In this document: one piece after another, positions 32,851-56,000 of the stretch
Layout: each line of letters opens with the position of its first letter
Numbering within the stretch: the first letter of the stretch is position 1
NCBI GenBank assembly: GCA_965649765.1
Contig: OZ287752.1
Location: forward strand, 66,836,001 to 66,900,000
Direction: 5' to 3'
DNA length: 64,000 bases
From: Bispira polyomma
Taxonomy: Eukaryota
Notes under the pieces: generated by a model
Databases searched by the model: none
The model's input: the letters and a program-made list of their open reading frames with translations, nothing else
Told to the model about the DNA's origin: nothing
Position numbers and translations under genes: made by a program

Positions 32851-34949
32851 TTCATCATAACTCTTGTTCCATATTTATGCCATGTATGATCATAGCCATC
32901 TAGATATCTCAGTCGTTGAAATCATTTGAAATTGTATCCAAACTCTGGCCAATTTAGGTCGAAACATCAAAAATGATGTCATAGTCTCACAGAGCAAGAT
33001 AGAGAAATGCCATGTTCATGGAACAAATGAAACTGTGGTGGGCTGACGCCTCGGCGACAGCCCCTTCAGTTCTGGTACCAGGCCATTGGGGCCAACTAGG
33101 CCACCTGAGGTCATCTGGACAACTAAAGGGTTTGGCGCCCAGCAAGCGCCATCATTAAAATTTTAACATTTGAGAAAGCAAGAGTGTTAAACAACTTGGA
33201 GCTTTTACTCCCCTGCTGCTTCTAATAAGGTTCTGGTTTTAATAAGAAAATGGAGAGCATGGACCAATATGTGCAGGATACAGAGGCGGCGCTTTTCTAA
33301 CCCAGCGCCAGTAAGGCATGTATAACACCACCTACTCTGTTAAATATCAATGTTGCTAATACAGTATAACTAAACCAGTGGTTGAGGCTGTTGTGTTTTC
33401 GTTAGAATTTCTACGTACAAACGACAGTGTACAATCTCAGGTTGACTAATGTTTAGTACAACTACAACAACTCACTAAATTGACCAGAGGTAAACTAAAG
33501 TCCCAGTGTGGTGGTACTGAGGCCCATAATAAAAGAAGTGTGCACTGGCTGCAAAATTTCGTGTTATCAGGGGTTAAAAAGACTAGGCCCATGTACAATG
33601 ATCTTTCACTTGTCCAATTTACCTCTGAAGTACGGGAGGTAATGCTTGAATATTTAGCAAATTTGATGGACGACGCCCATGATTTCTCCCAGGAGGCCGC
33701 TAAAGCTTCGAATGCTATTTTGCTTACAAATATGGAACTTGACTGCCTTAAATGGACGGACGTGGAAAAGGTAGACAGTGTACGTCAGGCTCATGCCCAG
33801 TGACATATTCCCCCCAGTGCCAATGGAAAACTGTGATGGATTGCACCACATAAATTGTGTCCAAAGAAAGGGGCTACAAAAAACTAAGTGGCCACTGCAG
33901 AAATGCAGTGGCTGTAAATAGGCAGATTAATAAAGTTTATTCTAGGACAGTGGAACATGGTTGTAAACGGGGAAAATTGTACTTCCCGTGTTTACACAAT
34001 GGAATCTGTTGAACATTGATAAAAATAAACAAAAAACATTCACCAAGGTGAAGGGATTTAACACAAGGGAAGGGGTCACCAGTAAATGTGTTGAAAACAC
34101 TGTGCTTCCTCTCAATCAGCCTGACAAAGCAGGGTTTTCCAACCAGAACAGAAGAGGTAATACTTGGCGTGCCAGAAACAATTCAGTTGACTCAAGGGTT
34201 TTCCCTCCTGCCTCTGTAACAAAAAGTGTAAACTCGGGTCGGGGTAACAATAGAAGTAAGGGCAGTGCCTTGTAAGTACCTCTCCACAACAAGTTTGCTT
34301 CTTTAACTTTTTGTGTGGAGGATGGGGATGTTAATGACTGTGTGAAAGGGGAGAGGGGGTTTTGGAAAAGGCGTTAAAACATAACCAAGGCCCAACCAAC
34401 CGTAGTAATGACACCAATGTTTCTAAAAAGGCTACCAGTCCTCCCGAACAATTAACAAAGACTGATTTGACCCACTGTGATGACAAGTATGCGTTGAATA
34501 TGCCTAAATGTCCCGACAAAAAGCAACATATAAATAATGCTAAAGAATATGATACTTACAAGATGTGGGTTGTGCAAAACTATGGGAAGTTTGAGTTTAT
34601 TCCACTCACCTGTTGAGAGGTACCGTGGTCGACAACTCTGGTGTTAAGTTGCCACTACACACACTAACCCTACACATTTTGGATGGGCACCCTAATTATA
34701 GAGGCCTCCAGTTACCGGTCATTAAGTCGGAACTTATTAACTATTCATCAGCTATTCACTATCCGAAACATGTGTGCCACTATCTGCGAGAAGAATGTCA
34801 ATTGGGGGCCATGTATGGGCCGTTTGCTGCACCCCTACTTGACAAGTTATACACCTCCCCTTTCATGACTAGGGACAAGTCGAGATCCAATAATCATAAT
34901 TGTAATTGTAATTAGACTTTTATTGCGCTTAATCTCCCCTTAACAAAGG

Positions 34950-35102
34950 TGTAAGGCAGGGCCCCAGCTCTGGCGCTCTCAGTTCTGGGGGACCAGTCTT
35001 AGTCTTCACGCTTCATTGCTTGCGGGCTGTATATAAGGCAGCTTCATTCAAACGTCCCGCCATTTATAACAATAGTGTTCACAGAATAACAACTTTGGAA
35101 CG
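34950..35102 (+). repeat. Terminal repeat A1 (153 bp)
   Basis: TGTAAGGCAGGG...CTTTGGAACG; differs from the downstream A copies at 1-2 positions. Confidence 0.95.
35030..35065 (+). promoter_or_regulatory. Putative TATA box and initiator in repeat A (repeated in every A copy)
   Basis: TATATAAG at 35030-35037 with Inr-like CCATTT about 30 nt downstream, upstream of the gag ATG at 35188. Confidence 0.55.
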
Positions 35103-35187
35103 GACATCTTGGAAATTCAAGTTTATGTTTCCGATTTTCTTTCTGTTTTTAGTCTTTTAGTGTATTTTATCAGTTTTAAACTTTACA

Positions 35188-36004
35188 ATGCCTCCTGTGT
35201 ATCATTGTTCGAGGTGTCAAGAAAAGCATGAAAGGCCCGTTGGCAATGCTTGTACTCTGGAAGCCGTGTCTGTGGAAGCCACTGTTAGTGCTGTCTCTGC
35301 TAAGGATTCATCCACTCTCGCTTCAAAGTCAGGTTCAGATATTGTTTCTAGTAAAATTTTACTGCAACTGCAGTCCATGGCGCAGATGATGGAACACATG
35401 GACCAGAGAGTTCAGCAGACAGAGGCAGCACTGGCGGCGGACGTCCACAACAAGAATCAGGCTAGTATTGTTTCAAATTCTGTTGTTAAGAGTAGTTCTG
35501 TGAGCACCGATACCAGTGAAGTTTTATCCACTGAAACCGTAGTTCCGAATATAGACTTTTTACGCAGGAACAGTCAAATTCAAAGCCAAGTTGAATTAAG
35601 GCTGGCGGAGTTAAAACAGCTAAATGAAAACCCACAGCAAGGTAAACTAAAGTCACAAAGGGGAGGGGACGTTGATATTTTGGTCAAATGCGTCGTAGAA
35701 TGGCCCCAAAACCATGTCTTGACGGGCAGTTGTAAATCAAGGCCCACATATGATGACTTATCAGTCAACCAATGGGTATGTGGAAAAAGTCGAATGAGAT
35801 TAGGGAAATTATGCTAGATTATATGGCTAATTTGATGGAAGATGCAGAGGATTTCTCTTGGGAGTCGGCAAAAGCTTGCCATGCGGTTGTGCTCACCCAC
35901 ATGGAAATGGGGAAGGTTAAATGGTCAGAGGTCAGAGGTGTTTGCGAAACCTGTGGGGGTCACACAAATCCAGTGCATGTAACAAGAAGAGTCTAAAAAA
36001 CTAA
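35188..36004 (+). pseudogene. gag-like ORF1 (N-terminal CxxC-H-C Zn motif, coiled coil); C-terminal half disrupted
   Basis: MPPVYHCSRCQEKHERPVGNAC...GKLKSQRGG...WPQNHVL...YDDL; frameshift/deletion near 35780 and deletion near 35930 relative to siblings; ends AAA AAC TAA. Confidence 0.85.
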
Positions 36005-38421
36005 GGGGCCACTGCAATTCTGAAGTGGAAAATAGCAAAGACAAAAAAGAACTTTTTATAACTCAGAATTTAGTAATTTGGAGTTATTTGCTAAAGATGT
36101 AAGGGGTAAAATGCTCACTTACAATAAAGGTAAACGTGCATGCTGTTCATACAGCGACGCATTACAAAATATAAATAGCACAAGAAAACAGGTCGTTGTA
36201 AATAAAAGTAAAAGTGTCAAAGTGTGCAAACCTGTAAATAAGTGTCGTGTTTACTCTGTCCCGGCCACGCAAAACAAACAAAAGACCTGTGAGCGGGGGC
36301 AAAGTAAATACACCAAGTAAACAATGCTTGGACGTACCAAGCCTGTTAGTGAATGTCTCCCATATAAATCACTAGTGAATAATAGTGTCGACCGAGCTGC
36401 CTTGTGGCATAACAGATTCCAACCCCTCTACCAAACCATTGTTGAACTCAACAATGGGGAGGTCGAGGATAGTGTGAACAAAAACGAGAGTGTTAATGAC
36501 AAGCCACAACAAGGTGCGAAAAAAAGGCGATTGATTAAAGACAATGCTGGGAATCAGGGTAATGACAGAAATGTCAACACAAATCCAACATATAATTCAG
36601 TTGCCCCTTCAGACAAGTACGCTTTGGGGCTTAAGCAAAAACGCAATAAACGGGAGTTGCTAACTAAAGCCCGGAACGATGAGACGTACAAGGCGTGGCA
36701 TGAGCAAAATGATGTCGACTATGGATTCATTCCACTTAACACGTTAGGATGCAAAATTTAAGATAGGGGGGCGAAAAATCATGGCCTAGATACCTTCCAA
36801 ATGCATGCTAAATTAAGAGCTGATGGCAGACACAATTATAAGGGTCTCCAACTTGTGGTCGAATCGCAATTAAATGCCGAGAAGTGGCAAGATTACCTCA
36901 CTAAGTATTGGGACTGGCAACTGCCCCTGCTCGTTAAGTACGGTTTCCCGTTAGACGTATGTCGAGGAAAAGTTAGTCAGTCGGGCAATTGTAACCATAG
37001 TTCGGCGGAAACTTTTCCAGAACATGTGGAGATGTATCTGAATGAGGAATGTAACTTTGGGGCTATATTAGGGCCCTTCAAGGAGCCCCCTATTAGGGAC
37101 TTGCATTGTTCGCCGATGATGACACGTGAGAAGTCCAGCTCGGCTAATGGGAGAGTAATAGTCGATTTGAGTTGGCCACATGGTCATTCGGTTAACGCAG
37201 GTGCTTCTGCTAACTCCTACCTTGACACTGGTGTTATTCTATCATATCCTTCCATTGATAACATTACTACTGAAGTAACCAGATTGGGTAGAGGATGTCA
37301 TATCTATAAAATTGATGTAAGTAGGGCCTTTAGGCACGTTCCCATAGATCCGGGTGACATCAATCTACTTGGCCTAAAATGGAAAGACTTCTACGTCGAT
37401 AAATGTCTTCCCTTCAGGTATCAGAATTGGAGTACTATTTTCCAGCGTCTTTCTGATGCTGTAAGATTTATAATGAAGGCGGAGGGATACAAAGTAGACA
37501 ACTATATAGACGATTTTTTGACCGTATCGTTGCCAAGTAAAATAACAGCCAGTTACGAACGTCTTCAGGCCTTGCTCAAGGAGCTCGGCCTCACGGTCAG
37601 CCAGAAAAAGTTGGTTCCCCCCAGCACACGGGTAATATGCCTGGGCATACTAATAGATACTGAAAGTTATACCACCTCTATCCCGGACGAAAAAATGCAG
37701 GAAATTACAGACAAGTGTGACATGTGGCAAGGGAAAGAATTTTGTACTAAAAAAGAATTACAGTCCTTATTGGCCTCCCTCTTATATGTAGCCAAATGCA
37801 TTAAATATGCTAGAGTCTTTTTGAACCGTATGTTGCAATTCCTCAGAGACAATTATAGCAAAAGTCGGTTAATAGTCACTGAAGACTTCAACAGGGATTT
37901 AAATTGGTTTAGAACCTTCATTAGGCATTTCAATGGCGTGTTTTTTTTCACATAAGAGTACCCATACACAGGTAGAATTAGATTCATATCTAACCGGAAT
38001 GGGCAGCATCTGTGGCAATGATGTGTACAAACTTAAAGTACCCTCACACATGACCAGTGACAATATAGCGTCGCTTGAAATGATCAACATACTCGTTGCC
38101 CTCAAGCTATGGTCCAACGTATGGCAAGGCAAAAAAGTTATTTTTAAATGTGACAATCAGGAAGTGATCAGTGTCATGGAAACTGGGCGTACTCAAGATC
38201 CTGTTCCGGCTGCCTACAGCAGAAATATTTACATGTGGGCTAGCAAATTTGATATAGACATAAGAGTTATTCATATTTTGGGTGTGAAGAACAAGGTTGC
38301 AGACCTTCTCTCACGTTGGGATAAAGTGAATAATAATGAATACTTACTTGCTCAATGGGTGGGGTCGGTTAACTGGCTGCACACAGATGCCACCCTCCTA
38401 GACATTGACTACACAATTTAA
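36001..38421 (+). pseudogene. pol-like ORF2: N-terminal linker, reverse transcriptase, RNase H
   Basis: RVIVDLSWP, KIDVSRAF, YIDD, CLGILID; RNase H LEMINI, CDN, ADLLSRW. Stops at 36318 and 36759, frameshifts near 36050 and in the T-run at ~37945. Confidence 0.9.
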
Positions 38422-38456
38422 AGATGTTGTATCTATCCTGTGGTACTATGTTTCAG

Positions 38457-39445
38457 GAATGCATCCTTTGGACTCCCTGTTCACAAATAGAGCCTGCAAG
38501 AGACTGCATTTTGCTTTTGCTGAATCAACAGCCAGGGCCTATGATGCCATGTTTAGACTCTTCCTGGCCTTTGGAGCTTTCATGCAATGGCCTCTATATC
38601 AGGTGATTGTATTCAGGATTTTGTCTTTTTTAGAGTTTCTGACTTTTAATCATATGTCTGCTGCTCAAATTGCAAATCATCTTTCGGCTGTTAAAGCGAA
38701 ATGCATTCTCTTTCATGTAAATGTGGACTGCTTTGCAGATCCACATATATCTTATTATAGTAGGGCTCTTGCTATTAATAAGCCTTTACAAGCCAAACTT
38801 AAAACATTGTTTGATATTCCTTTGCTAACTGCATTGGTTGCCAAATGTGACAACACGTATATGGGACAGATCTTTAAGGCTGTTTATCTGACCAGTTTTT
38901 TCAGTTTCTTGAGGCTTTCCAATTTGTGCCCACACTCTGTGGCTGGGTTCTCTCCATTGAAGCATTTGGCCAGAGGGGATGTGCTTTTTAAGCCTGGGTA
39001 CATAACTCTTTTAGTAAAATGGTCTAAGACCATGCAGGTGAACAATCAAATTAAACTGTTAAACATTCCAGTCCTGCAGAACTCATGCCTATGTCCTGTG
39101 GCTGCTCTGAAGAATGTGCTGGCCCTTACCCCTGGTGGCCCTAACATGCCTCTTTTTCAGTATAAGTTAGGTGGTGCTTGGGTTCCGTTGACAGACACCA
39201 GGGTTCGGCGTCACTTGAAGAATGTGCTGCAGCTCCTGGGCTGTGGTCATGCTAACCTTACTTTCCATGCGTTCCGGCGTTCAGGTGCCACGTTTGCCTT
39301 TAACAATAATGTCAACATACAGGACATTCAGCGGCATGGCACCTGGACGTCGGACTGCGTCTGGAGGTACATCACAGATTCGGCCCAGACGGGGTCCCAG
39401 GTCGCTGATTGCTTCAAGGGTGCGCTTCAGCCTACTCCTAGGTAA
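38457..39445 (+). CDS. Tyrosine recombinase (intact frame; probably second exon of a spliced GagN-YR mRNA)
   Basis: Open to TAA at 39443-39445 with catalytic R (FLRLSN), K (WSKT), HxxR (FHAFRRSGA), H/W (HGTW) and Y (VWRYI); preceded by acceptor TTTCAG ending at 38456; first ATG at 38459. Confidence 0.9.
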
Positions 39446-39455
39446 CTCTGGTGTT

Positions 39456-40285
39456 TGGTGGTCTGACTTCTATAGGTCACCTGTGCAAAAAGAATATATA
39501 AATGTTATGGTATAATAAACATAAATTTGGACAGTTCACAACCCCCTTGTCCTTGGGCATAAGGTCACCTTATATCTCGGTACATTATGTACTCTTACAT
39601 AATTTATCTTCCAATCACTTTGCAACCTCCATAGTATGCTTTAAATCAACCTTAAACTCAAGGTAGGGCCAACAGTTCGGGCCCATACTGACTTGAACTC
39701 AAGGTATGTTCATAATTAAGTTCAAATTTAAGTCGGGCTCACTAACGGTGCCCCTTCATTGACATACTCTTGACACATTGGTTGCTAGTCTTAAACTCAA
39801 TTTAGGGCCATCATTAGGCCCCCTCAAAATTCTTTAGTTAAGGTGACCTTAAGTCAACCTTATTGTTATATAAAAACTTAGACTGACTTTACGTTCACCT
39901 TAAACTTTAACTCACTGTAAGGTGACCTTATGCCCCCCAACTATAATCTGAAACTGTACATACTATACCTGTAGAACTAACCATGCTAGTCATTAATAAA
40001 TATTTACCCGCAAGTGTTTTTCTGTGTTGCTAAAGAAATTAGAAAATTATTAAGGTTTCTATTACCAACTTAGACTGACTTTACGTTCACCTTAAACTTT
40101 AACTCACTGTAAGGTGACCTTATGCCCCCCAACTATAATCTGAAACTGTACATACTATACCTGTAGAACTAACCATGCTAGTCATTAATAAATATTTACC
40201 CGCAAGTGTTTTTCTGTGTTGCTAAAGAAATTAGAAAATTATTAAGGTTTCTATTACCAACTTTCCCTTGGCCCACGGGGAACTG
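39456..40285 (+). repeat. Terminal repeat B1 (830 bp = 648-bp B with a 10-bp deletion and a 192-bp internal duplication)
   Basis: Aligns to B copies such as 41191-41838; duplicated block 39875-40066 / 40067-40258. Confidence 0.92.
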
Positions 40286-43200
40286 TGTAAGGCAGGGCCC
40301 CAGCTCTGGCGCTCTCAGTTCTGGGGGACCAGTCTTAATCTTCACGCTTCACTGCTTGCGGGCTGTATATAAGGCAGCTTCATTCAAACGTCCCGCCATT
40401 TATAACAATAGTGTTCACAGAATAACAACTTTGGAACGCCCACCCTCCACTACCCTTTCTTAATTGCTTTTTGTAGTTGTAGGAGTTATCACAGTGGTTG
40501 GACTTGGCGAATTGGGCAGGCTTCCTCGATGGTGAGCCTGGTGTAACCTTGGTTCCCAGGTCTCCACGTCTTTATCACTCCCAGTGGTTCCAGCCGTTTG
40601 TAGATCGCGGTTGTCAGGTTTACCATCACAGGCCAGTGTTCCGGCCTCATGAACGTTCGTGCTGGGACTGGTTCCGATTATGCTGGGATGTGTTTAATGT
40701 TGGGAAGCTGTAAGATATAGTATCACAGATCTGGAAGTACTGCCTTAATTTGCTTTAGTGCCTGTGTTGAATAAATGTGCTTAATGTAATGTTAAAAGTA
40801 AAGATTTTATACAATTAGATTTTAAATGAATAAAGCAGATAAGTTTCAAGTAGTAAATGTGCTGGCTCTTCTCACGCGAGAATTTTGTGTTAAATAAGGG
40901 GCCGTATTGCTCGCCTAGTAGGACTGTTCCTGTAAGCTAGAGTGTGAATTGCTGGCTTTTAGATTAAATGTACAAGATGGCTGTCTTACACCATCGCTGG
41001 GATATTTTTTGGAATGAACTCTTGGTGCAGTCAGTGAGGGCGTGACTGCGGATACCATTTTACCTCGCCAGTAAATTATTTAGTAGTTATTTACTTAGTC
41101 TCTTTAAATTGTTTTATGAACTTTTACACCATGAACTTGTTACAACAAGATTTTTATGTTTTTAATTATCCTTATATATACATATCGCTGTGGTGGTCTG
41201 ATTTCTATAGGTCACCTGTGCAAAAAGAATATATAAATGTTATGGTATAATAAACATAAATTTGGACAGTTCACAACCCCCTTGTCCTTGGGCATAAGGT
41301 CACCTTATATCTCGGTACATTATGTACTCTTACATAATTTATCTTCCAATCACTTCGCAACCTCCATAGTATGCTTTAAATCAACCTTAAACTCAAGGTA
41401 GGGCCAACAGTTCGGGCCCATTTACTTCCATACTGACTTGAACTCAAGGTATGTTCATAATTAAGTTCAAATTTAAGTCGGGCTCACTAACGGTGCCCCT
41501 TCATTGACATACTCTTGACACATTGGTTGCTAGTCTTAAACTCAATTTAGGGCCATCGTTAGGCCCCCTCAAAATTCTTTAGTTAAGGTGACCTTAAGTC
41601 AACCTTATTGTTATATAAAAACTTAGACTGACTTTACGTTCACCTTAAACTTTAACTCACTGTAAGGTGACCTTATGCCCCCCAACTATAATCTGAAACT
41701 GTACATACTATACCTGTAGAACTAACCATGCTAGTCATTAATAAATATTTACCCGCAAGTGTTTTTCTGTGTTGCTAAAGAAATTAGAAAATTATTAAGG
41801 TTTCTATTACCAACTTTCCCTTGGCCCACGGGGAACTGTGTAAGGCAGGGCCCCAGCTCTGGCGCTCTCAGTTCTGGGGGACCAGTCTTAATCTTCACGC
41901 TTCATTGCTTGCGGGCTGTATATAAGGCAGCTTCATTCAAACGTCCCGCCATTTATAACAATAGTGTTCACAGAATAACAACTTTGGAACGCCCACCCTC
42001 CACTACCCTTTCTTAATTGCTTTTTGTAGTTGTAGGAGTTATCACAGTGGTTGGACTTGGCGAATTGGGCAGGCTTCCTCGATGGTGAGCCTGGTGTAAC
42101 CTTGGTTCCCAGGTCTCCACGTCTTTATCACTCCCAGTGGTTCCAGCCGTTTGTAGATCGCGGTTGTCAGGTTTACCATCACAGGCCAGTGTTCCGGCCT
42201 CATGAACGTTCGTGCTGGGACTGGTTCCGATTATGCTGGGATGTGTTTAATGTTGGGAAGCTGTAAGATATAGTATCACAGATCTGGAAGTACTGCCTTA
42301 ATTTGCTTTAGTGCCTGTGTTGAATAAATGTGCTTAATGTAATGTTAAAAGTAAAGATTTTATACAATTAGATTTTAAATGAATAAAGCAGATAAGTTTC
42401 AAGTAGTAAATGTGCTGGCTCTTCTCACGCGAGAATTTTGTGTTAAATAAGGGGCCGTATTGCTCGCCTAGTAGGACTGTTCCTGTAAGCTAGAGTGTGA
42501 ATTGCTGGCTTTTAGATTAAATGTACAAGATGGCTGTCTTACACCATCGCTGGGGTATTTTTTGGAATGAACTCTTGGTGCAGTCAGTGAGGGCGTGACT
42601 GCGGATACCATTTTACCTCGCCAGTAAATTATTTAGTAGTTATTTACTTAGTCTCTTTAAATTGTTTTATGAACTTTTACACCATGAACTTGTTACAACA
42701 AGATTTTTATGTTTTTAATTATCCTTATATATACATATCGCTGTGGTGGTCTGATTTCTATAGGTCACCTGTGCAAAAAGAATATATAAATGTTATGGTA
42801 TAATAAACATAAATTTGGACAGTTCACAACCCCCTTGTCCTTGGGCATAAGGTCACCTTATATCTCGGTACATTATGTACTCTTACATAATTTATCTTCC
42901 AATCACTTCGCAACCTCCAGAGTATGCTTTAAATCAACCTTAAACTCAAGGTAGGGCCAACAGTTCGGGCCCATTTACTTCCATACTGACTTGAACTCAA
43001 GGTATGTTCATAATTAAGTTCAAATTTAAGTCGGGCTCACTAACGGTGCCCCTTCATTGGCATACTCTTGACACATTGGTTGCTAGTCTTAAACTTAATT
43101 TAGGGCCATCGTTAGGCCCCCTCAAAATTCTTTAGTTAAGGTGACCTTAAGTCAACCTTATTGTTATGTAAAAACTTAGACTGACTTTACGTTCACCTTA

Positions 43201-46200
43201 AACTTTAACTCACTGTAAGGTGACCTTATGCCCCCCAACTATAATCTGAAACTGTACATACTATACCTGTAGAACTAACCATGCTAGTCATTAATAAATA
43301 TTTACCCGCAAGTGTTTTTCTGTGTTGCTAAAGAAATTAGAAAATTATTAAGGTTTCTATTACCAACTTTCCCTTGGCCCACGGGGAACTGTGTAAGGCA
43401 GGGCCCCAGCTCTGGCGCTCTCAGTTCTGGGGGACCAGTCTTAATCTTCACGCTTCATTGCTTGCGGGCTGTATATAAGGCAGCTTCATTCAAACGTCCC
43501 GCCATTTATAACAATAGTGTTCACAGAATAACAACTTTGGAACGCCCACCCTCCACTACCCTTTCTTAATTGCTTTTTGTAGTTGTAGGAGTTATCACAG
43601 TGGTTGGACTTGGCGAATTGGGCAGGCTTCCTCGATGGTGAGCCTGGTGTAACCTTGGTTCCCAGGTCTCCACGTCTTTATCACTCCCAGTGGTTCCAGC
43701 CGTTTGTAGATCGCGGTTGTCAGGTTTACCATCACAGGCCAGTGTTCCGGCCTCATGAACGTTCGTGCTGGGACTGGTTCCGATTATGCTGGGATGTGTT
43801 TAATGTTGGGAAGCTGTAAGATATAGTATCACAGATCTGGAAGTACTGCCTTAATTTGCTTTAGTGCCTGTGTTGAATAAATGTGCTTAATGTAATGTTA
43901 AAAGTAAAGATTTTATACAATTAGATTTTAAATGAATAAAGCAGATAAGTTTCAAGTAGTAAATGTGCTGGCTCTTCTCACGCGAGAATTTTGTGTTAAA
44001 TAAGGGGCCGTATTGCTCGCCTAGTAGGACTGTTCCTGTAAGCTAGAGTGTGAATTGCTGGCTTTTAGATTAAATGTACAAGATGGCTGTCTTACACCAT
44101 CGCTGGGGTATTTTTTGGAATGAACTCTTGGTGCAGTCAGTGAGGGCGTGACTGCGGATACCATTTTACCTCGCCAGTAAATTATTTAGTAGTTATTTAC
44201 TTAGTCTCTTTAAATTGTTTTATGAACTTTTACACCATGAACTTGTTACAACAAGATTTTTATGTTTTTAATTATCCTTATATATACATATCGCTGTGGT
44301 GGTCTGATTTCTATAGGTCACCTGTGCAAAAAGAATATATAAATGTTATGGTATAATAAACATAAATTTGGACAGTTCACAACCCCCTTGTCCTTGGGCA
44401 TAAGGTCACCTTATATCTCGGTACATTATGTACTCTTACATAATTTATCTTCCAATCACTTCGCAACCTCCAGAGTATGCTTTAAATCAACCTTAAACTC
44501 AAGGTAGGGCCAACAGTTCGGGCCCATTTACTTCCATACTGACTTGAACTCAAGGTATGTTCATAATTAAGTTCAAATTTAAGTCGGGCTCACTAACGGT
44601 GCCCCTTCATTGGCATACTCTTGACACATTGGTTGCTAGTCTTAAACTTAATTTAGGGCCATCGTTAGGCCCCCTCAAAATTCTTTAGTTAAGGTGACCT
44701 TAAGTCAACCTTATTGTTATGTAAAAACTTAGACTGACTTTACGTTCACCTTAAACTTTAACTCACTGTAAGGTGACCTTATGCCCCCCAACTATAATCT
44801 GAAACTGTACATACTATACCTGTAGAACTAACCATGCTAGTCATTAATAAATATTTACCCGCAAGTGTTTTTCTGTGTTGCTAAAGAAATTAGAAAATTA
44901 TTAAGGTTTCTATTACCAACTTTCCCTTGGCCCACGGGGAACTGTGTAAGGCAGGGCCCCAGCTCTGGCGCTCTCAGTTCTGGGGGACCAGTCTTAATCT
45001 TCACGCTTCATTGCTTGCGGGCTGTATATAAGGCAGCTTCATTCAAACGTCCCGCCATTTATAACAATAGTGTTCACAGAATAACAACTTTGGAACGCCC
45101 ACCCTCCACTACCCTTTCTTAATTGCTTTTTGTAGTTGTAGGAGTTATCACAGTGGTTGGACTTGGCGAATTGGGCAGGCTTCCTCGATGGTGAGCCTGG
45201 TGTAACCTTGGTTCCCAGGTCTCCACGTCTTTATCACTCCCAGTGGTTCCAGCCGTTTGTAGATCGCGGTTGTCAGGTTTACCATCACAGGCCAGTGTTC
45301 CGGCCTCATGAACGTTCGTGCTGGGACTGGTTCCGATTATGCTGGGATGTGTTTAATGTTGGGAAGCTGTAAGATATAGTATCACAGATCTGGAAGTACT
45401 GCCTTAATTTGCTTTAGTGCCTGTGTTGAATAAATGTGCTTAATGTAATGTTAAAAGTAAAGATTTTATACAATTAGATTTTAAATGAATAAAGCAGATA
45501 AGTTTCAAGTAGTAAATGTGCTGGCTCTTCTCACGCGAGAATTTTGTGTTAAATAAGGGGCCGTATTGCTCGCCTAGTAGGACTGTTCCTGTAAGCTAGA
45601 GTGTGAATTGCTGGCTTTTAGATTAAATGTACAAGATGGCTGTCTTACACCATCGCTGGGGTATTTTTTGGAATGAACTCTTGGTGCAGTCAGTGAGGGC
45701 GTGACTGCGGATACCATTTTACCTCGCCAGTAAATTATTTAGTAGTTATTTACTTAGTCTCTTTAAATTGTTTTATGAACTTTTACACCATGAACTTGTT
45801 ACAACAAGATTTTTATGTTTTTAATTATCCTTATATATACATATCGCTGTGGTGGTCTGATTTCTATAGGTCACCTGTGCAAAAAGAATATATAAATGTT
45901 ATGGTATAATAAACATAAATTTGGACAGTTCACAACCCCCTTGTCCTTGGGCATAAGGTCACCTTATATCTCGGTACATTATGTACTCTTACATAATTTA
46001 TCTTCCAATCACTTCGCAACCTCCAGAGTATGCTTTAAATCAACCTTAAACTCAAGGTAGGGCCAACAGTTCGGGCCCATTTACTTCCATACTGACTTGA
46101 ACTCAAGGTATGTTCATAATTAAGTTCAAATTTAAGTCGGGCTCACTAACGGTGCCCCTTCATTGGCATACTCTTGACACATTGGTTGCTAGTCTTAAAC

Positions 46201-48050
46201 TTAATTTAGGGCCATCGTTAGGCCCCCTCAAAATTCTTTAGTTAAGGTGACCTTAAGTCAACCTTATTGTTATGTAAAAACTTAGACTGACTTTACGTTC
46301 ACCTTAAACTTTAACTCACTGTAAGGTGACCTTATGCCCCCCAACTATAATCTGAAACTGTACATACTATACCTGTAGAACTAACCATGCTAGTCATTAA
46401 TAAATATTTACCCGCAAGTGTTTTTCTGTGTTGCTAAAGAAATTAGAAAATTATTAAGGTTTCTATTACCAACTTTCCCTTGGCCCACGGGGAACTGTGT
46501 AAGGCAGGGCCCCAGCTCTGGCGCTCTCAGTTCTGGGGGACCAGTCTTAATCTTCACGCTTCATTGCTTGCGGGCTGTATATAAGGCAGCTTCATTCAAA
46601 CGTCCCGCCATTTATAACAATAGTGTTCACAGAATAACAACTTTGGAACGCCCACCCTCCACTACCCTTTCTTAATTGCTTTTTGTAGTTGTAGGAGTTA
46701 TCACAGTGGTTGGACTTGGCGAATTGGGCAGGCTTCCTCGATGGTGAGCCTGGTGTAACCTTGGTTCCCAGGTCTCCACGTCTTTATCACTCCCAGTGGT
46801 TCCAGCCGTTTGTAGATCGCGGTTGTCAGGTTTACCATCACAGGCCAGTGTTCCGGCCTCATGAACGTTCGTGCTGGGACTGGTTCCGATTATGCTGGGA
46901 TGTGTTTAATGTTGGGAAGCTGTAAGATATAGTATCACAGATCTGGAAGTACTGCCTTAATTTGCTTTAGTGCCTGTGTTGAATAAATGTGCTTAATGTA
47001 ATGTTAAAAGTAAAGATTTTATACAATTAGATTTTAAATGAATAAAGCAGATAAGTTTCAAGTAGTAAATGTGCTGGCTCTTCTCACGCGAGAATTTTGT
47101 GTTAAATAAGGGGCCGTATTGCTCGCCTAGTAGGACTGTTCCTGTAAGCTAGAGTGTGAATTGCTGGCTTTTAGATTAAATGTACAAGATGGCTGTCTTA
47201 CACCATCGCTGGGGTATTTTTTGGAATGAACTCTTGGTGCAGTCAGTGAGGGCGTGACTGCGGATACCATTTTACCTCGCCAGTAAATTATTTAGTAGTT
47301 ATTTACTTAGTCTCTTTAAATTGTTTTATGAACTTTTACACCATGAACTTGTTACAACAAGATTTTTATGTTTTTAATTATCCTTATATATACATATCGC
47401 TGTGGTGGTCTGATTTCTATAGGTCACCTGTGCAAAAAGAATATATAAATGTTATGGTATAATAAACATAAATTTGGACAGTTCACAACCCCCTTGTCCT
47501 TGGGCATAAGGTCACCTTATATCTCGGTACATTATGTACTCTTACATAATTTATCTTCCAATCACTTCGCAACCTCCAGAGTATGCTTTAAATCAACCTT
47601 AAACTCAAGGTAGGGCCAACAGTTCGGGCCCATTTACTTCCATACTGACTTGAACTCAAGGTATGTTCATAATTAAGTTCAAATTTAAGTCGGGCTCACT
47701 AACGGTGCCCCTTCATTGGCATACTCTTGACACATTGGTTGCTAGTCTTAAACTTAATTTAGGGCCATCGTTAGGCCCCCTCAAAATTCTTTAGTTAAGG
47801 TGACCTTAAGTCAACCTTATTGTTATGTAAAAACTTAGACTGACTTTACGTTCACCTTAAACTTTAACTCACTGTAAGGTGACCTTATGCCCCCCAACTA
47901 TAATCTGAAACTGTACATACTATACCTGTAGAACTAACCATGCTAGTCATTAATAAATATTTACCCGCAAGTGTTTTTCTGTGTTGCTAAAGAAATTAGA
48001 AAATTATTAAGGTTTCTATTACCAACTTTCCCTTGGCCCACGGGGAATTG
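40286..48050 (+). repeat. Tandem array of five 1553-bp units, each A (153) + spacer C (752) + B (648)
   Basis: Units start at 40286, 41839, 43392, 44945, 46498; identical small ORFs recur every 1553 bp in the ORF track. Confidence 0.97.
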
Positions 48051-51000
48051 GGACTCTAAGGCGCACCAGCACAAGAGACAGTTATCCAATTTCCAAAATC
48101 AAGGGACAGAAAAAGGGTCAGCAACATAGAGCGCGCCGGGGGATGATTGAGACTAAGGTGGATATGCTTTAGTGTACCAATGGGTTTTAAGCTTCTTTCT
48201 AAAACAGGCTAGTGAGGGGGAAGCACGAATCACATCAGGAAGACCATTCAAAACAATGGGAGCATCAAAAGCAAAGCTGTGACCAAACTGTTTAACCGAC
48301 TTTTGAGTAGATGGGTGGAACTTCGGAACAAGGAAATTACTACCACTCTGACTACGTCTGGTATTGTAGGAACTACTGTAAGTGGAAAGATATGGGGCAA
48401 AATACTTTGGAAACCCAGTGTGGAGAAACTTATAAACAAGTGTAGCTGTCTTAAACACTGAACGCTGTTCAACAGGGAGCCAATGCAATTTCTTAAGAAC
48501 AGGAGTTATACTAGTGTATCGACTGGTGTTTGACACAATTCTAGCTGCACTATTTTGAATGCATTGTAATTTGCGTAAATTAAACTTTGAGAGACTCCTG
48601 AAAAGTGAATTGCAGTAATCCAGTCTACTACTGACAAAGGCATTGGCCACAAGTATAGAAGCATCATAAGTGAGAAACCGTCTGACACGTCTAAAGTCAC
48701 GAAGTTGCATAAAACAGCTTTTGCAGACACTCTGAACGTGTTTAGAGAAAGAAAAGTCAAAGTCAAACCATACACCCAGGTTCTTGACAGAATCAGCTGG
48801 ACTGAAAGGGCTTGAACCGTAATCATAGGGTCATAATACACCTCAACTGGCCTGAAGGCCATTCCGTCAATGCTGCTGTATGTCCTAACTCATATTTGAA
48901 CTCATATTTTACTCACTCTACCCTCAATTGATACAATGACAAGCCAAATCAGAGCCATGGGAAAGGGTTCCTTGATTTTCAAAGTGGACATAAGCTGTGC
49001 ATTCCGACAAGTGACCATGGACCCAAAAGAGGTTACTTACTGCGACTATATTGGGATGGGTACTATGTGGACGGATCGCTGCCCTTCGGCTAAAAACCCG
49101 AATCCGCCATCTTCCAGCGAATTTCAGATGGCATACAGTATATTATGAAAGGTGAAGATCACCACATTACAAATTATATTGAAGATCTCCTATGTTGCTG
49201 GACTCCTACAAAAATATACAAAACATATTATCGCCAACAGAGCCTGTTAACTGAATAAGGTCTTACCTTGAATGACAAAAAACTAGTTCCTCCGGTGACC
49301 CAGGTTACTTGTCTAGGTATTAATACTGTTACAGTTGAATTTACTACCTCAATACCAGAGGAAAAACTCGCAAATGTTCAAGCTATGGTGATACTTGGGC
49401 TGATAAAAAATACTGCACAAAGAGAGAAGTCCAGTGTTTACTGGGTTTACTTTTGTATGTGTCAAAGTGTGTAAAGTACTCCAGGTTTTTCCTAAATAGG
49501 ATGCTACAGCTTTTTAGAAGCAATCATAAAAGCAAATCATTCAAAATTTCCCCTGAATTTCGACAGGATTATAAATGGTTCAAGACTTTTATGGGTTTAT
49601 GGTAGCCAGGTGTACACACTTCCCATACCTCCTGCACCATCAGAACATTGCCTTTCTTGAAATATTAAATATTTTGGTCGCCTTGAGACTATGGGCTCAT
49701 CAGTGTAAAGGTCCTGTTAAAGTGTGATAACCAGGCTGTGGTTAGTGTCCTAATGGCAGGACTCGGGACCCTGCGTTGGTCTTATGCTCCCGAAATATTT
49801 TCATGGTGGCTAGCCACTATGATGTTGAAATACAAGTCATTCATATACTAGGGGACCATAACACAACTGCTGACATGCTGTCCAGATGGCCAACTCCAGC
49901 CAGGATAAAATTCGCTTGCATAGTCTTGTAGGCCAGGTCCTGTGATGTCCAGTGACCGAAAAACAACTGTTACTTAATTGAGAGCTAGAGCTGATATCAT
50001 GACACATCCGGATAAAGCCGTGTTAGTCATCAAATGGTCTAAAACCATGCAAAACAACAAACAAATTAAATTAATAACAGTTCCACGTTTGTCAGGCTCA
50101 CCATTATGCTCTGTTAGGGAAATGGAGGACATTTTAGCACTCACCCCCTCTGGTGATAATTTACGTCTGTTCCAGTTCAAAGTCAATCACAACTGGTTCC
50201 CCTTAACAGACTCAATGGCACATTGTCACTTTGAAAACATCTTCACCAGGTGACAACTAAAAAGCCTCGGGACTTACCTTTCACGCTTTTCGTAATTCAG
50301 GTACCACATTCACTTGCAACCATAATGTCAGCATTCAAAATATCCCAAAACATGGCACCTGGACCTCGGATTGAGTGTGAAGGTACGTCACCGATACTGT
50401 CAATGCTGGCCACCAAGTGGCTGAAACCTTCAGACAACAATTGCCCCCCCCCCCCCTCCCTTTAATCCTACTGCTTTTGGGTTTGGGTGTTTAATAGTTA
50501 TTTCCAAGGCTTACATGTATGTTAACTCTAACTTTATCTTTATCATTTAGTTAACTTGCTAGTTCAAACTTAGAGTCTGCTGAACTATAAAATAGTAATT
50601 TAACTTTTCAGTATAAAGCAACTATAACTTTAACTTTTCACAAGTATTACTTTAACTGTTAACTATTGCTTTAACTTTTCGCAAGTATTGCTTGGCTGTG
50701 TGTTTAATGCTTATACTTGACTGTTTCGAGTTAACAAATTGTATTGTAATGGTAACTTGTGTTAAAACTTAAGATTAATCCTTTGGAATGTAAGGTCACC
50801 TTTCTGAAAATGAGTGACTAAGGGCTACTTAAAGTAACATGGACAATGAAATTTAGTTATTAAGGTGACCTCACCTTAAAATTATCTATTAAGGCTAAAA
50901 CATTTATTTTTGGTGGCCCTAAGTCAACAAAGTTTGGGCAAAAAAATTAATTTTACTCTACTGTGACCTTAAGTCGCTTTGTACATAGTCATAGCCTAAC

Positions 51001-53029: not shown

Positions 53030-56000
53030 GTTGCACACCCAGCGCCAATCAGGCATGTAGTACTTTACCTACTAACAGTATTAATGTTGTTCCCAATGTA
53101 GTCGTTACTAGTGTGGTTGAGCCAGTAGCAGAGGCTATAGCCTCTTCCTTAGATTACCTGCGCTCTAATGAAAAGTTGCAAACACAAGTAGACCAATGGT
53201 TACTTCAGCTCCAACAGCTCAATCAATTAACAGGAGCAGGTAAATTAAAATCCCAACGAGGTGGTACTGATGCCCATATTAAAAAGGCTGTAGATAGGCC
53301 CCAGAACTTTGTTCTTTCTGGAGCTAAAAAGGTTCGACCTACATACGATGATTTGACTTTGGTTCAATTTACTTCTGGATTCGTGAGATGTGTACAGGAA
53401 CAAAAGTCCCCTGAGATAAAGGAAGCTATGCTTGAGTATTTAGCCAACCTTATGGACGACGCCTCATGTTATACTGTTGACAAACATGGAATTAGATCGC
53501 CTTAAATGGACGGATGTAGATAAGGTTAATCGTATTCGCCGGGAATATGCCCAACAGCACATCTCGAGTAGTGTTGGTTCTGGTTTAAAGGCTAGTACTA
53601 GTAACAAGCAGAAAACACAGGCTAAAACACAAGGTGTCAATTGTCGATTTTTTCAGGAGGGTACCTGTAAATTTAATGCCACCCATTGAATTTCTGGCCA
53701 GCTTTTCAAACACTGCTGTGAGACTTGCGATGGCTCTCACCAAACTAAATTATGTTCAAAAAACGGGTAAAAAAACTAAGGGCCCACTGCAGTGATGGAG
53801 TGGGTATGACAGTCTTTAGTAAGGTTGTATATAACTCGGGATTCAAGGATTTTAAATTGTTAACTAATGTGTGTTCCAAGCAGTATGCTTGTTTTAACGA
53901 GGTTGTACATAAATCATATGGAGATGTACTTGTAAAGGATGAAGTGATTGGCAAGACCCCAAAACAAATTTCTGCTGTGGGCGAAATCGAGGCGGGTAAA
54001 CTGGCAGATGTTTTGGTTCAAAACAGAAACAACCTAAGTACTAAAAAGGGTTCTGTATTCGATCAAAGGAAAATTAAAGCCAGAAATCCTTCGGTACACA
54101 GTTCCCGCCCCCCTGTCAGGTGGGAAATGTGTAACAGTGGCATTCACCACAAACATACACGGGGTGTCAAAAGTCGCTCAGTTCAAGTGTCCAAGGGCCC
54201 TAATCCTTTAACCAAGTGCAAAGCTGCCAACAAGCCTTTGTTGAGAAAAGGGGGGTAACCCTGTGAGTGCTGACACATGTTTTCAATTACCACTCTACAA
54301 TCGATATGGTGTGCTAGACACACCTTGTGGGGAGGGGGGAAGTCACGCTAAATTGGTTGATTGTCTGGAGGTCCCCCTTTCTGAATTGGGTTCCCAAATT
54401 AAGAAAACAATTAACAGAAATACAGAGGTGTCAGCCCCCAGGAAAAAACCCCACGAAAACAAAGACTGATTTAACAGACGATCAATATGTTCTGGACATG
54501 TGCCGGTCACTTGATAAGCGCAAAAGACTTAATGACGCTAAAGAGTGTGATATTTTGAAGTATGGGACCTGCAAAACAGCGGAAAATTTGGTTTTATTCC
54601 CCTGTCATCCTGGGGCGAAAAACTTTCAGATAATTCTCAGAAACAAAGTTCCTTAAATGTCTTTACACTTCACAAGTGGTTGCAAGAGGACAGCCGCCCT
54701 AAGTATAGGGGACTACATATCCCAGTCACTTCTCAATTAAATGCTTCAGTATGGGCTGCCTACTTGAGGGACTACTGGGACTGGGAGCTCCCCTTGCTTA
54801 TCAAATTCGGTTTTCCTCTTGACTTTACTGACAAAGGCGAATTTAATTCTGATCTTAAAACCATTCCTCTGCTAATCAGTACCCTGAACATGTCACCCAT
54901 TACTTGGAGGAAGAATGTAAATTGGGGGTCATGTATGGTCCCTTTGATGTGCCAACAATTTTAAATTTACATACCTTCCCTTTCATGACTCGCGACAAGT
55001 CTAGCTCTACCAATCGTCGTGTCATAGTTGACTTAAGCTGGCCTGAAGGCCATTCAGTAAATTCTGCCGTGTGTCCAAATTCCTACCTGGATAGAGAATT
55101 CTTATTGACTTACCCGTCTATAGACACTATAACAGCCTAGGTGCTTGCTATGGGCAGAAGCTCTCTCATATTTAAGGCTGACATTAGTTGTGCTTTTAGA
55201 CACGTGTCAATGGACCCAAAAGAGCTAAATTTACTGGGACTATATTGGGATGGGTACTATGTAGACGGGTCCCTCCCTTTTGGCTACAAGCACGGCTCGG
55301 CTATATTCCAGCGAATTTCGGATGGGGTCAGATATATCATGAAAGGTAAAGGTCACCATATCAAAGGCGAATTTAATTCTGATCTTAAAACCATTCCTCT
55401 GCTAATCAGTACCCCGAACATGTCACCCATTACTTGGAGGAAGAATGTAAATTGGGGGCCATGTATGGTCCCTTTGATGTGCCAACAATTTTAAATTTAC
55501 ATACCTTCCCTTTCATGACTCGCGACAAGTCTAGCTCTACCAATCGTCGTGTCATAGTTGACTTAAGCTGGCCTGAAGGCCATTCAGTAAATTCTGCCAT
55601 GTGTCCAAATTCCTACCTGGATAGAAAATTCTTATTGACTTACCCGTCTATAGACACTATAACAGCCCAGGTGCTTGCTATAGGCAGAAGCTCTCTCATA
55701 TTTAAGGCTGACATTAGTTGTGCCTTTAGACACGTGCCAATGGACCCAAAAGAGCTAAATTTACTGGAACTATATTGGGATGGGTACTATGTAGACGGGT
55801 CCCTCCCTTTTGGCTACAAGCACGGCTCGGCTATATTCCAGCGAATTTCGGATGGGGTCAGATATATCATGAAAGGTGAAGGTCACCATATCCTCTACCA
55901 TATCGACGATCTCCTTTGTTGCTCAGTTCCATCTAAGATATATACCACATATCACCGATTGCAAAGCCTACTGGCAGAATTCGGTCTCACCTTGAGTTAG

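What the first reader, a model, noticed from the sequence alone, without database searches (positions are those of the whole stretch)
40286..48050. Ngaro terminal module amplified into a 7.8-kb head-to-tail array of perfect A-to-B mini-elements
Seen: five 1553-bp units, each starting at the exact element 5' end (TGTAAGG) and finishing at the exact 3' end (GGGGAAYTG), so every boundary is a B|A junction. Known: Ngaro elements normally have one internal B|A junction, equivalent to the circle junction used for YR integration. Inference: the array is a concatemer of potential non-autonomous mini-elements next to an intact recombinase, formed by unequal B x B exchange, rolling-circle-like reverse transcription, or repeated YR integration of A-C-B circles. 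It is a route from a retrotransposon end to a macrosatellite.
Basis: partly seen in the sequence, partly recalled or inferred. Interest (0 to 1): 0.8.

Follow-up and report, generated by a model that had tools for sequence, protein, structure and literature searches.

The report
Five-fold repeated tail of Ngaro retrotransposon
One copy of a tyrosine-recombinase (Ngaro-type) jumping gene has had its normal 1.55-kb tail module copied five times head to tail; the array is real, but it is a one-off local amplification, not a new mobile mini-element or a satellite.

Summary
Window 40286-48050 is five head-to-tail 1553-bp units. Units 2-4 are identical, unit 1 differs at 6 sites and unit 5 at 1. Every boundary is the same B|A junction.

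The array is the 3' end of one precise 13,101-bp Ngaro-type insertion (34950-48050). Paralogues of the host repeat show the empty site, with no target duplication.

The unit (A 153 bp, spacer C 752 bp, B 648 bp) is this family's normal 3' module. Classified copies elsewhere in the genome carry it:
- zero times at 20 loci
- once at 12 loci
- twice at 1 locus
- as a solo unit at 4 loci

Eleven further junction sites could not be classified. Only this locus is known to have more than two units.

Contig k-mer depth of a stretch found whole only in these units is 4.7-5.1 times single-copy depth. That fits about 4-6 units and excludes 1-2.

The most likely origin is homology-driven unequal exchange between the element's own direct repeats. 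An early duplication (0.39% diverged) was followed by a very recent expansion (0% diverged). Recombinase-mediated junction-to-junction exchange cannot be excluded.

Solo units scatter among full-length lineages, so nothing indicates a mobile mini-element family or a macrosatellite. The scan had already noted this same stretch (s1-621243).

The parts
34895..34949 (.). Left part of the host high-copy repeat R, which is the target of the insertion
   Evidence: In paralogues L032-L034 this sequence is directly joined to the sequence at 48051 onwards.
34950..35102 (+). A1, the 153-bp 5' terminal repeat. It starts with TGTAAGG and contains a TATA-like motif at A positions 81-89.
   Evidence: 99.3% identical to unit positions 1-153. 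TATA-like motif located. Promoter function is inference.
35103..39455 (+). Internal coding region. ORFs: 35188-35817 (position of gag, no Pfam hit), 36801-37955 (RT), 37933-38421 (RNase H), 38405-39445 (tyrosine recombinase).
   Evidence: ORF list. Pfam RVT_1 31 bits and RVT_3 26 bits, both above cut-off. Phage_integrase 17.6 bits, below the cut-off of 27.1.
38405..39445 (+). Open tyrosine-recombinase ORF, 346 codons
   Evidence: The translation shows R (..FLRLSNL..), H-x-x-R (..HAFRRSG..) and Y (..WRYI..). The motif reading is mine. No PDB sequence match.
39456..40285 (+). B1, the internal copy of the 648-bp B repeat. Here it is 830 bp because of a 10-bp deletion and a 192-bp duplication.
   Evidence: BLAST to unit positions 906-1553 and alignment.
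39875..40263 (+). Perfect 192-bp tandem duplication inside B1, absent from all unit B copies
   Evidence: TRF reports period 192, 2.0 copies, 100% matches.
40286..41838 (+). Unit 1 (A 1-153, C 154-905, B 906-1553)
   Evidence: Six differences from units 2-4. Of these, 67C, 717A and 1222A are derived in unit 1.
41839..46497 (+). Units 2, 3 and 4, identical to each other
   Evidence: They share derived 1082G, 1258T and 1330G.
46498..48050 (+). Unit 5. Its B is the true 3' end of the insertion.
   Evidence: Differs from units 2-4 only at 1551. It abuts the host repeat at the empty-site position.
42566..42628 (+). 63-nt block in spacer C (unit positions 728-790, at the same offset in every unit). 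It stays far better conserved than the rest of C in a family only about 75% identical overall and contains a 7-bp hairpin.
   Evidence: Alignment A1 and coordinates. No compensatory changes were seen, so the structure is unproven.
48051..48812 (.). Right part of the host high-copy repeat R
   Evidence: At least 823 candidate copies, the best 40 at 98-99% identity. Contig word depth about 3-4 x 10^5 against about 17 for single copy.

Best explanation
A single Ngaro-type tyrosine-recombinase retrotransposon inserted precisely, without target duplication, into a copy of a very abundant repeat. Its architecture is A1 - gag/RT/RH/YR - B1 - [A-C-B]. The A-C-B block is the family's normal 3' module. 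At this locus the module was later amplified to five head-to-tail copies by homology-driven unequal exchange: sister-chromatid or allelic crossover, or replication template switching. The first step used the 648-bp B1 and B2 repeats, and later steps used whole 1553-bp units.

The history has two tiers. A first duplication is about as old as the insertion (unit 1 versus unit 2, 0.39% diverged). A very recent expansion took the array from 2 to 5 units (units 2-5 are identical).

Shown: the array, its exact junctions, the single-insertion boundaries, the family-wide copy-number series and the two-tier divergence.
Inferred: the recombination mechanism and its timing.

The array has no demonstrated function. 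It multiplies recombinase junction sites, TATA-like A segments and a conserved spacer block.
For: Array and junctions.

Single precise insertion at 34950-48050: three paralogues of the host repeat read ...AACAAAGG directly followed by GGACTCTAAGG....

A-C-B is the normal module. Twelve loci have INT-B1-A-C-B, and C is also present in a related family about 75% identical.

The same family shows every product expected from recombination between its direct repeats:
- n=0 (INT-B then flank) at 20 loci
- n=2 at C11:19.098 Mb
- solo A-C-B at 4 loci
Loss through the long B repeat (648 bp, 20 loci) is more frequent than loss through the short A repeat (153 bp, 4 loci), as homology length predicts.

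At the n=2 locus, A2 and A3 differ at 1 site from each other and at 4-5 sites from A1. The duplication therefore post-dates insertion.

B1 and B2 of one element are sisters in the B tree for most of the ten one-unit elements that had both copies in the tree. Repeats are therefore alike at insertion and diverge afterwards.

Polarised differences: three derived states private to unit 1 and three shared by units 2-5.

Copy number: a 125-nt stretch found whole only in the five units forms a contig of word depth 82.1 (X1) and 108.7 (X2). The flank has 16.2-17.5 and 21.1-21.9. Its 31-mers are shared with 1.03 other copies on average. Fitting four contigs gives about 4.6-5.8 units. One or two units would predict a ratio of 2-3, not about 5.
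Against: No sequence feature separates homologous exchange from recombinase-mediated exchange at the B|A junction.

Units 2-5 show no unit 1/unit 2 hybrid. By my own rough calculation, a stepwise random-crossover path from (u1,u2) to (u1,u2,u2,u2,u2) gives such a clean pattern only about 6% of the time. Repeated expansion and contraction, or homogenisation of interior units, would relax this.

The youngest clade contains three n=0 copies and no ordinary n=1 copy. This hints that module number may also change during transposition itself.

The copy-number support comes from contig word depths, which the tool warns are not copy numbers. The sample may be the one that was assembled. No spanning long reads were available.
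Confidence: 0.55

Rival explanations
1. Recombinase-mediated origin. The element's tyrosine recombinase treats each B|A junction as an attP-like site. It excises A-C-B circles between directly repeated junctions, or between a junction and the B|flank end, and re-integrates them into a B|A junction. This adds whole units, as in tandem prophage integration.
For: All junctions are exact and no hybrid units exist. The YR ORF is open with R, HxxR and Y. Both n=0 copies and solo units, the two products of junction-to-end resolution, exist. n=0 copies are already common in the youngest clade. The first base after the 3' end is A or T in 38 of 39 other copies, so a specific crossover site is in use.
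Against: Every product is equally explained by homologous exchange. There is no circle, RNA or protein evidence. Solo units are few (4) and scattered. RT and RNase H are out of frame in this subfamily, so activity of this copy is unproven. Pfam support for the YR is below cut-off.
Confidence: 0.2
2. Born as an array. Template switching of reverse transcriptase between the B repeats, or rolling-circle-like copying, produced a multi-unit cDNA that integrated as such.
For: Direct repeats are known to be gained and lost by template switching in retroviral reverse transcription (my own knowledge). Young n=0 copies suggest module number changes at transposition. The unit 1/unit 2 divergence (0.39%) is similar to the B1/B(unit 1) divergence (3 substitutions in about 640 nt), so an n=2 birth is possible.
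Against: Units copied from one template would be identical at birth. Yet units 2-5 are identical while unit 1 differs at 6 sites, split 3 and 3 between the two lineages. At least the 2-to-5 step must therefore be much younger than the insertion. At the n=2 locus the duplication post-dates A1/A2 divergence.
Confidence: 0.08
3. Assembly artefact. The true locus has fewer or more units, and the assembler mis-counted identical repeats.
For: Units 2-4 are 100% identical over 4.7 kb, the situation in which assemblers err. No long reads could be laid. Without a scale correction, the depth ratio minus shared words gives about 4 rather than 5.
Against: Distinguishing sites anchor both ends (last at 41615 in unit 1, and 48048 in unit 5). 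A read of about 6.5 kb resolves the count, and the assembly is chromosome-scale (75 contigs for 1.035 Gb). Word depth of the locus-specific stretch is about 5 times single copy in two runs and excludes 1-2 units.
Confidence: 0.07

Closest known systems
Canonical Ngaro retrotransposons, A1-[ORFs]-B1A2B2 (Goodwin and Poulter 2004, as described in PMC9210276, PMC8547959 and PMC4157794)
   Same: [quoted passage not shown]
   Different: In this family A2 and B2 are separated by a 752-bp spacer C that is also present in a related family. At this locus the A-C-B module occurs five times instead of once.
Solo AB repeats of Ngaro elements in Cafeteria burkhardae (PMC8547959)
   Same: Isolated terminal modules scattered in the genome, read as recombination products analogous to solo LTRs. 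The four solo A-C-B units here fit the same reading.
   Different: That paper reports loss products only. In my term searches of it, 'tandem' did not occur. Here the gain products (n=2 and n=5) are seen as well.
Tandem arrays born from transposable elements (PMC5932611, PMC7004042, review PMC9659126)
   Same: Direct repeats supplied by a transposable element seed unequal exchange and expand into tandem repeats.
   Different: Those cases involve double insertions or internal repeats of LTR, non-LTR or DNA elements. The two reviews I searched (PMC9659126, PMC12628747) do not mention DIRS or Ngaro. Here the repeat unit is bounded by the recombinase junction, and the array has only 5 units at one locus.
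LTR-internal-LTR-internal-LTR tandem retrotransposons, and tandem prophages made by tyrosine integrases (my own knowledge, not checked here)
   Same: Unequal exchange between terminal repeats, or repeated site-specific integration, gives head-to-tail arrays with exact junctions.
   Different: Here only the non-coding tail module is multiplied, not the coding element.

Membership tests
Ngaro (tyrosine-recombinase retrotransposons) | Encodes reverse transcriptase and RNase H | tested here: met
   Pfam RVT_1 31 bits (cut-off 29.6) and RVT_3 26 bits (cut-off 21.6). 479 RT homologues were found, many of about 640-660 aa and some also carrying an RNase H-type domain (PF13456 or PF17917).
Ngaro (tyrosine-recombinase retrotransposons) | Encodes a tyrosine recombinase instead of a DDE integrase | tested here: met
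   Open 346-codon ORF with R, HxxR and Y motifs. The Pfam Phage_integrase hit is only 17.6 bits, below the cut-off of 27.1, so this rests partly on my reading of the motifs.
Ngaro (tyrosine-recombinase retrotransposons) | Split direct repeats A1-[ORFs]-B1A2B2, with the internal repeats downstream of the recombinase | tested here: met
   A1 34950-35102, B1 39456-40285, then A and B again. Variation: a 752-bp spacer between A2 and B2, and five modules here.
Ngaro (tyrosine-recombinase retrotransposons) | No methyltransferase domain, and no inverted terminal repeats with an internal complementary region (which would make it DIRS1-like) | tested here: met
   The RNase H ORF ends at 38421 and the YR ORF starts at 38405, leaving no room for such a domain. 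No MT family appears in Pfam. No inverted repeats of 60 nt or more in 30000-56000.
Ngaro (tyrosine-recombinase retrotransposons) | Insertion without target-site duplication | tested here: met
   Empty-site paralogues join the two flanks with no gain or loss of bases.
Ngaro (tyrosine-recombinase retrotransposons) | RT groups with the Ngaro clade in a phylogeny | not tested
   No named reference sequences were available.
Mobile non-autonomous mini-element family (A-C-B as a transposing unit) | Dispersed solo copies that form their own lineage and outnumber or match their autonomous partners | tested here: not met
   Four solo units against at least 34 copies with the coding region (20 n=0, 12 n=1, one n=2 and this locus). 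The solos fall in different clades next to full-length copies.
Satellite or macrosatellite DNA | Long arrays of many units, usually at several loci or variable in the population | tested here: not met
   Five units at one locus. 32 B|A junctions genome-wide, otherwise single apart from one n=2 locus among those classified. Spacer C has only 24 candidate matches in the genome. Population variation could not be tested.

The most novel reading that the evidence does not exclude
The array was built by the element's own tyrosine recombinase. B|A junctions act as attP-like sites, A-C-B circles are excised and re-integrated junction-to-junction, and the abundant n=0 copies and solo units are the by-products of the same reaction on the circular transposition intermediate. 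This would be a site-specific route from a retrotransposon end to a tandem repeat, not a homology-driven one, and a natural read-out of where this poorly understood recombinase cuts.
Probability: 0.2. Interest if true: 0.65.

Novelty: new variant of a known kind. Interest (0 to 1): 0.38.

Why it matters
How tyrosine-recombinase retrotransposons replicate and integrate is still largely a model on paper. This genome offers a complete natural series for one family: zero, one, two and five tail modules, plus solo modules, all with base-exact junctions and one verified empty site. That series constrains the model in three ways:
- B1 and B2 are alike at insertion.
- The tail module is often lost, even in young copies.
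- The base after the 3' end is almost always A or T.

It also provides defined substrates for testing the recombinase. As an example of tandem-repeat birth the array is ordinary in principle, small, and unique to one locus, so its wider significance is modest.

Tried and rejected
- TRF cannot see the array because its longest period is 500.
- Rfam found nothing in 30000-57000.
- The unit has no ORF above 85 aa.
- Spacer C does not fold better than shuffles (z = -0.6).
- The bacterial promoter/terminator scan is uninformative for a eukaryote.
- Consensus folding of the conserved part of C across 14 copies gave 0 compensatory pairs. The structured-RNA idea of earlier notes is therefore neither supported nor excluded.
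- No RNA run holds the stretch, and all four runs are kept as contigs. Transcription, spanning reads and true depth could not be examined.
- The B|A junction contig depth (about 10 times single copy) was considered as a copy-number measure. I rejected it because 13 genomic sites share the junction exactly.
I did not try another route.
- A shared derived state at unit position 1222 between B1 and unit 1 was considered as a mark of a hybrid B from B2 x B1 crossover. I rejected it as too weak: it is one site, and it is also seen in L022.
- Paper searches for Ngaro or DIRS tandem arrays found no report. This is absence of evidence only. The original Ngaro papers are not in the library.
Full report
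**Observation**

A lag-1553 self-comparison shows periodic sequence from 40067 to 48047, perfect from 41616 onwards. The repeat finder gives the same spacing. TRF missed it only because its longest period is 500.

Cut at the start of the element's 5' repeat, there are five units of exactly 1553 bp: 40286-41838, 41839-43391, 43392-44944, 44945-46497 and 46498-48050.
- Units 2-4 are identical.
- Unit 1 differs at six positions (67, 717, 1082, 1222, 1258, 1330).
- Unit 5 differs only at position 1551.

All five B|A junctions match the junction pattern exactly.

**Anatomy**

BLAST of one unit against the window splits it into three parts:
- A (positions 1-153), 99.3% identical to 34950-35102
- C (154-905), found only in the units
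- B (906-1553), which also occurs at 39456-40285

That internal B1 carries a 10-bp deletion and a perfect 192-bp tandem duplication (39875-40263) that no unit B has.

Between A1 and B1 lie ORFs with these Pfam results:
- reverse transcriptase, RVT_1, above cut-off
- RNase H, RVT_3, above cut-off
- an open 346-codon tyrosine-recombinase ORF, Phage_integrase, below cut-off

In the recombinase ORF I read the R, HxxR and Y catalytic motifs.

There is no room for a methyltransferase domain, and there are no inverted repeats of 60 nt or more. The layout is therefore A1-[ORFs]-B1-A-C-B. This is the Ngaro split-direct-repeat plan described in PMC9210276, PMC8547959 and PMC4157794, with a 752-bp spacer between A2 and B2. 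RT phylogeny was not tested.

**One insertion**

The 762 bp to the right of the array (48051-48812) belong to a very abundant repeat. It has at least 823 candidate copies, the best 40 at 98-99% identity.

In three paralogues of that repeat, the last 52-55 bp before A1 are directly joined to the first bases after unit 5. They read ...AACAAAGG followed at once by GGACTCTAAGG....

So 34950-48050 (13,101 bp) is one precise insertion, with no target duplication and no loss of target bases. The last unit's B is the true 3' end of the element.

**The family elsewhere in the genome**

The genome is 1.035 Gb in 75 contigs. A search with the unit, followed by mapping of A, C, B and the internal region on fetched loci, gave:
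- 12 loci with INT-B1-A-C-B (one module)
- 20 loci with INT-B followed directly by unrelated flank (no module)
- one locus with two modules after a full-length element (C11:19.098 Mb)
- four solo A-C-B units with no coding region or B upstream
- two partial copies

The junction pattern occurs at 32 sites, five of them here. Among the sites I could classify, none but the n=2 locus is spaced by a unit length.

A-C-B is therefore the ordinary tail of this family. C is also present in a related family only about 75% identical. Five modules is a one-off.

**Relationships among copies**

In a maximum-likelihood tree of 57 B copies, B1 and B2 of the same element are sisters in most of the ten one-unit elements that had both copies in the tree. 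The repeats are therefore alike at insertion and diverge afterwards.

Solo units fall in four different places, next to full-length copies, not in a lineage of their own. This does not fit a self-propagating mini-element. It does fit the solo-AB reading given for Cafeteria Ngaros (PMC8547959).

At the n=2 locus, the two unit A segments differ at one site from each other and at 4-5 sites from A1. That duplication happened after insertion.

**History of this array**

I used 20 other unit copies from 18 loci as outgroups.
- Unit 1 carries three derived states: 67C, 717A and 1222A.
- Units 2-5 share three others: 1082G, 1258T and 1330G.
- Unit 5 has 1551T.

Unit 1 and the unit 2-5 lineage are thus 0.39% apart. 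This is similar to B1 versus the B of unit 1 (3 substitutions in about 640 nt). Units 2-5 have no differences over 6.2 kb apart from the terminal site.

The simplest reading has two steps. An early step to two units took place at or soon after insertion. A very recent expansion to five units followed, about as recent as the perfect 192-bp duplication in B1.

**Is five real?**

Only contigs of public runs were available, not reads. A 125-nt stretch of C (46986-47110) occurs whole only in the five units. All 24 genomic candidates were scored.

| Run (both from one sample) | Word depth of the exact contig | Word depth of flank contigs, 48783-50422 | Ratio |
|---|---|---|---|
| X1 | 82.1 | 16.2-17.5 | 4.7-5.1 |
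| X2 | 108.7 | 21.1-21.9 | 5.0-5.2 |

Its 31-mers are shared with 1.03 other copies on average, so the assembly predicts a ratio of about 6. Three other contigs also fall at about 0.8 of their predicted values. Fitting a common scale factor gives 4.6-5.8 units. Without it the figure is about 4.

One or two units would predict ratios of 2-3 and are excluded. The tool warns that contig depth is not a copy number, and the sample may be the assembled one. I therefore treat this as support, not proof.

A second sample (X3) shows a variant contig at about 7 times single copy. That hints at differences between individuals but cannot be resolved.

**Mechanism**

The family shows the full set of products expected from recombination between its own direct repeats. 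Loss through the 648-bp B repeat (20 loci) is more frequent than loss through the 153-bp A repeat (4 loci). Gain is rare (n=2 once, n=5 once). This is why I favour homology-driven unequal exchange (confidence 0.55).

Three things keep recombinase-mediated junction-to-junction exchange alive (0.2).
1. There are no unit 1/unit 2 hybrids. My rough estimate is about 6% for such a clean outcome under stepwise random crossovers.
2. n=0 copies are already common in the youngest clade, which has no ordinary one-module copy.
3. A crossover site is evidently specific: the first base after the 3' end is A or T in 38 of 39 other copies.

Birth of the whole array during reverse transcription (0.08) is disfavoured by the two-tier divergence. 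Assembly error in the count (0.07) is disfavoured by the anchoring differences at both ends and by the depth.

**What is multiplied**

The unit has no ORF above 85 aa. A carries a TATA-like motif at positions 81-89. AATAAA motifs lie at 485, 544, 964 and 1455. Their roles are inference.

C as a whole does not fold unusually well. A 63-nt block (unit positions 728-790) stays far better conserved than the rest of C in the family that is about 75% identical overall, and it contains a 7-bp hairpin. No compensatory changes were seen. Earlier notes of this scan (s1-581962, s1-621224) pointed to a structured RNA in this spacer. I can confirm the conservation, not the structure.

**Comparison with the literature**

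Transposable elements seeding tandem arrays through unequal exchange is well described (PMC5932611, PMC7004042, PMC9659126). I found no report of it for Ngaro or DIRS elements in the searchable library. The founding Ngaro papers are not in that library, so this is weak evidence of novelty.

I therefore rate this a new variant of a known kind, with modest interest. The array is solid and is a tidy natural substrate for studying the recombinase. It is not a macrosatellite and not a mini-element family.

**Limits kept**

Frame differences are described only by position.

Noticed in passing
window 34895-34949 and 48051-48812: The host of the insertion is an extremely abundant repeat. It has at least 823 candidate copies, the best 40 at 98-99% identity. 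Contig word depth is about 290,000-490,000 against about 17 for single copy, so roughly 20,000-fold. It is also present at about 99% identity in a contig of a marine metagenome run (X4). Some copies extend to at least 1.6 kb. The minus-strand ORFs (48153-48862) have no significant Pfam hit.
   Followed up: partly
window 34739-34895, 48813-49271 and 54832-55995: Nested insertions. The abundant repeat itself sits inside a fragment of an older, divergent Ngaro-like RT region. Its two halves (left of 34895, right of 48813) match adjacent sequence at 54859-55085 at 73-77% identity. The older region at 54832-55661 also has a 530-bp tandem duplication at 99%.
   Followed up: no
window 37942-37949; L026, L028: At the RT/RNase H boundary the young subfamily (this copy, L026 and L028) has a run of eight T and is 2 nt shorter than the 15 older copies that cover this boundary. 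RT and RNase H therefore lie in different frames. Being shared by several young copies, it is a subfamily trait and not a private lesion.
   Followed up: partly
G000 loci L026-L028, L030, L035-L050: Copies that end at B1 with no A-C-B module (20 loci) outnumber the copies with one module (12 loci). They include three members of the youngest clade. The tail module may therefore be lost at or near transposition, not only by slow decay.
   Followed up: partly
3' flanks of 39 family copies (L006-L050): The first base after the element's 3' end (...GGGGAACTG) is A or T in 38 of 39 copies and C in one. The copy in this window is a further exception, with G. No longer target motif is visible. This suggests a one-base target preference, or that this base is part of the crossover site.
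   Followed up: no
G000:C11:50946783-50951837 (L051/L052): A related family about 75% identical has the same A1-INT-B1-A2-C-B2 plan. It also has the last 13 nt of B directly upstream of its A1, a junction-like sequence at its 5' flank. It might have inserted next to another element's B end, or be the remnant of a tandem.
   Followed up: no
window 42566-42628 (same offset in every unit): A 63-nt block of spacer C with a 7-bp hairpin stays far better conserved than the rest of C in the family that is about 75% identical overall. No compensatory changes were seen in 14 sequences.
   Followed up: partly
window 46951-47117, run X3 (sample S2): In the second sample, the contig over this part of C carries G at 46951 and one other difference. 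Its depth is about 7 times single copy, against about 5 times for the exact sequence in sample S1. This may reflect a sequence or copy-number difference between individuals.
   Followed up: no
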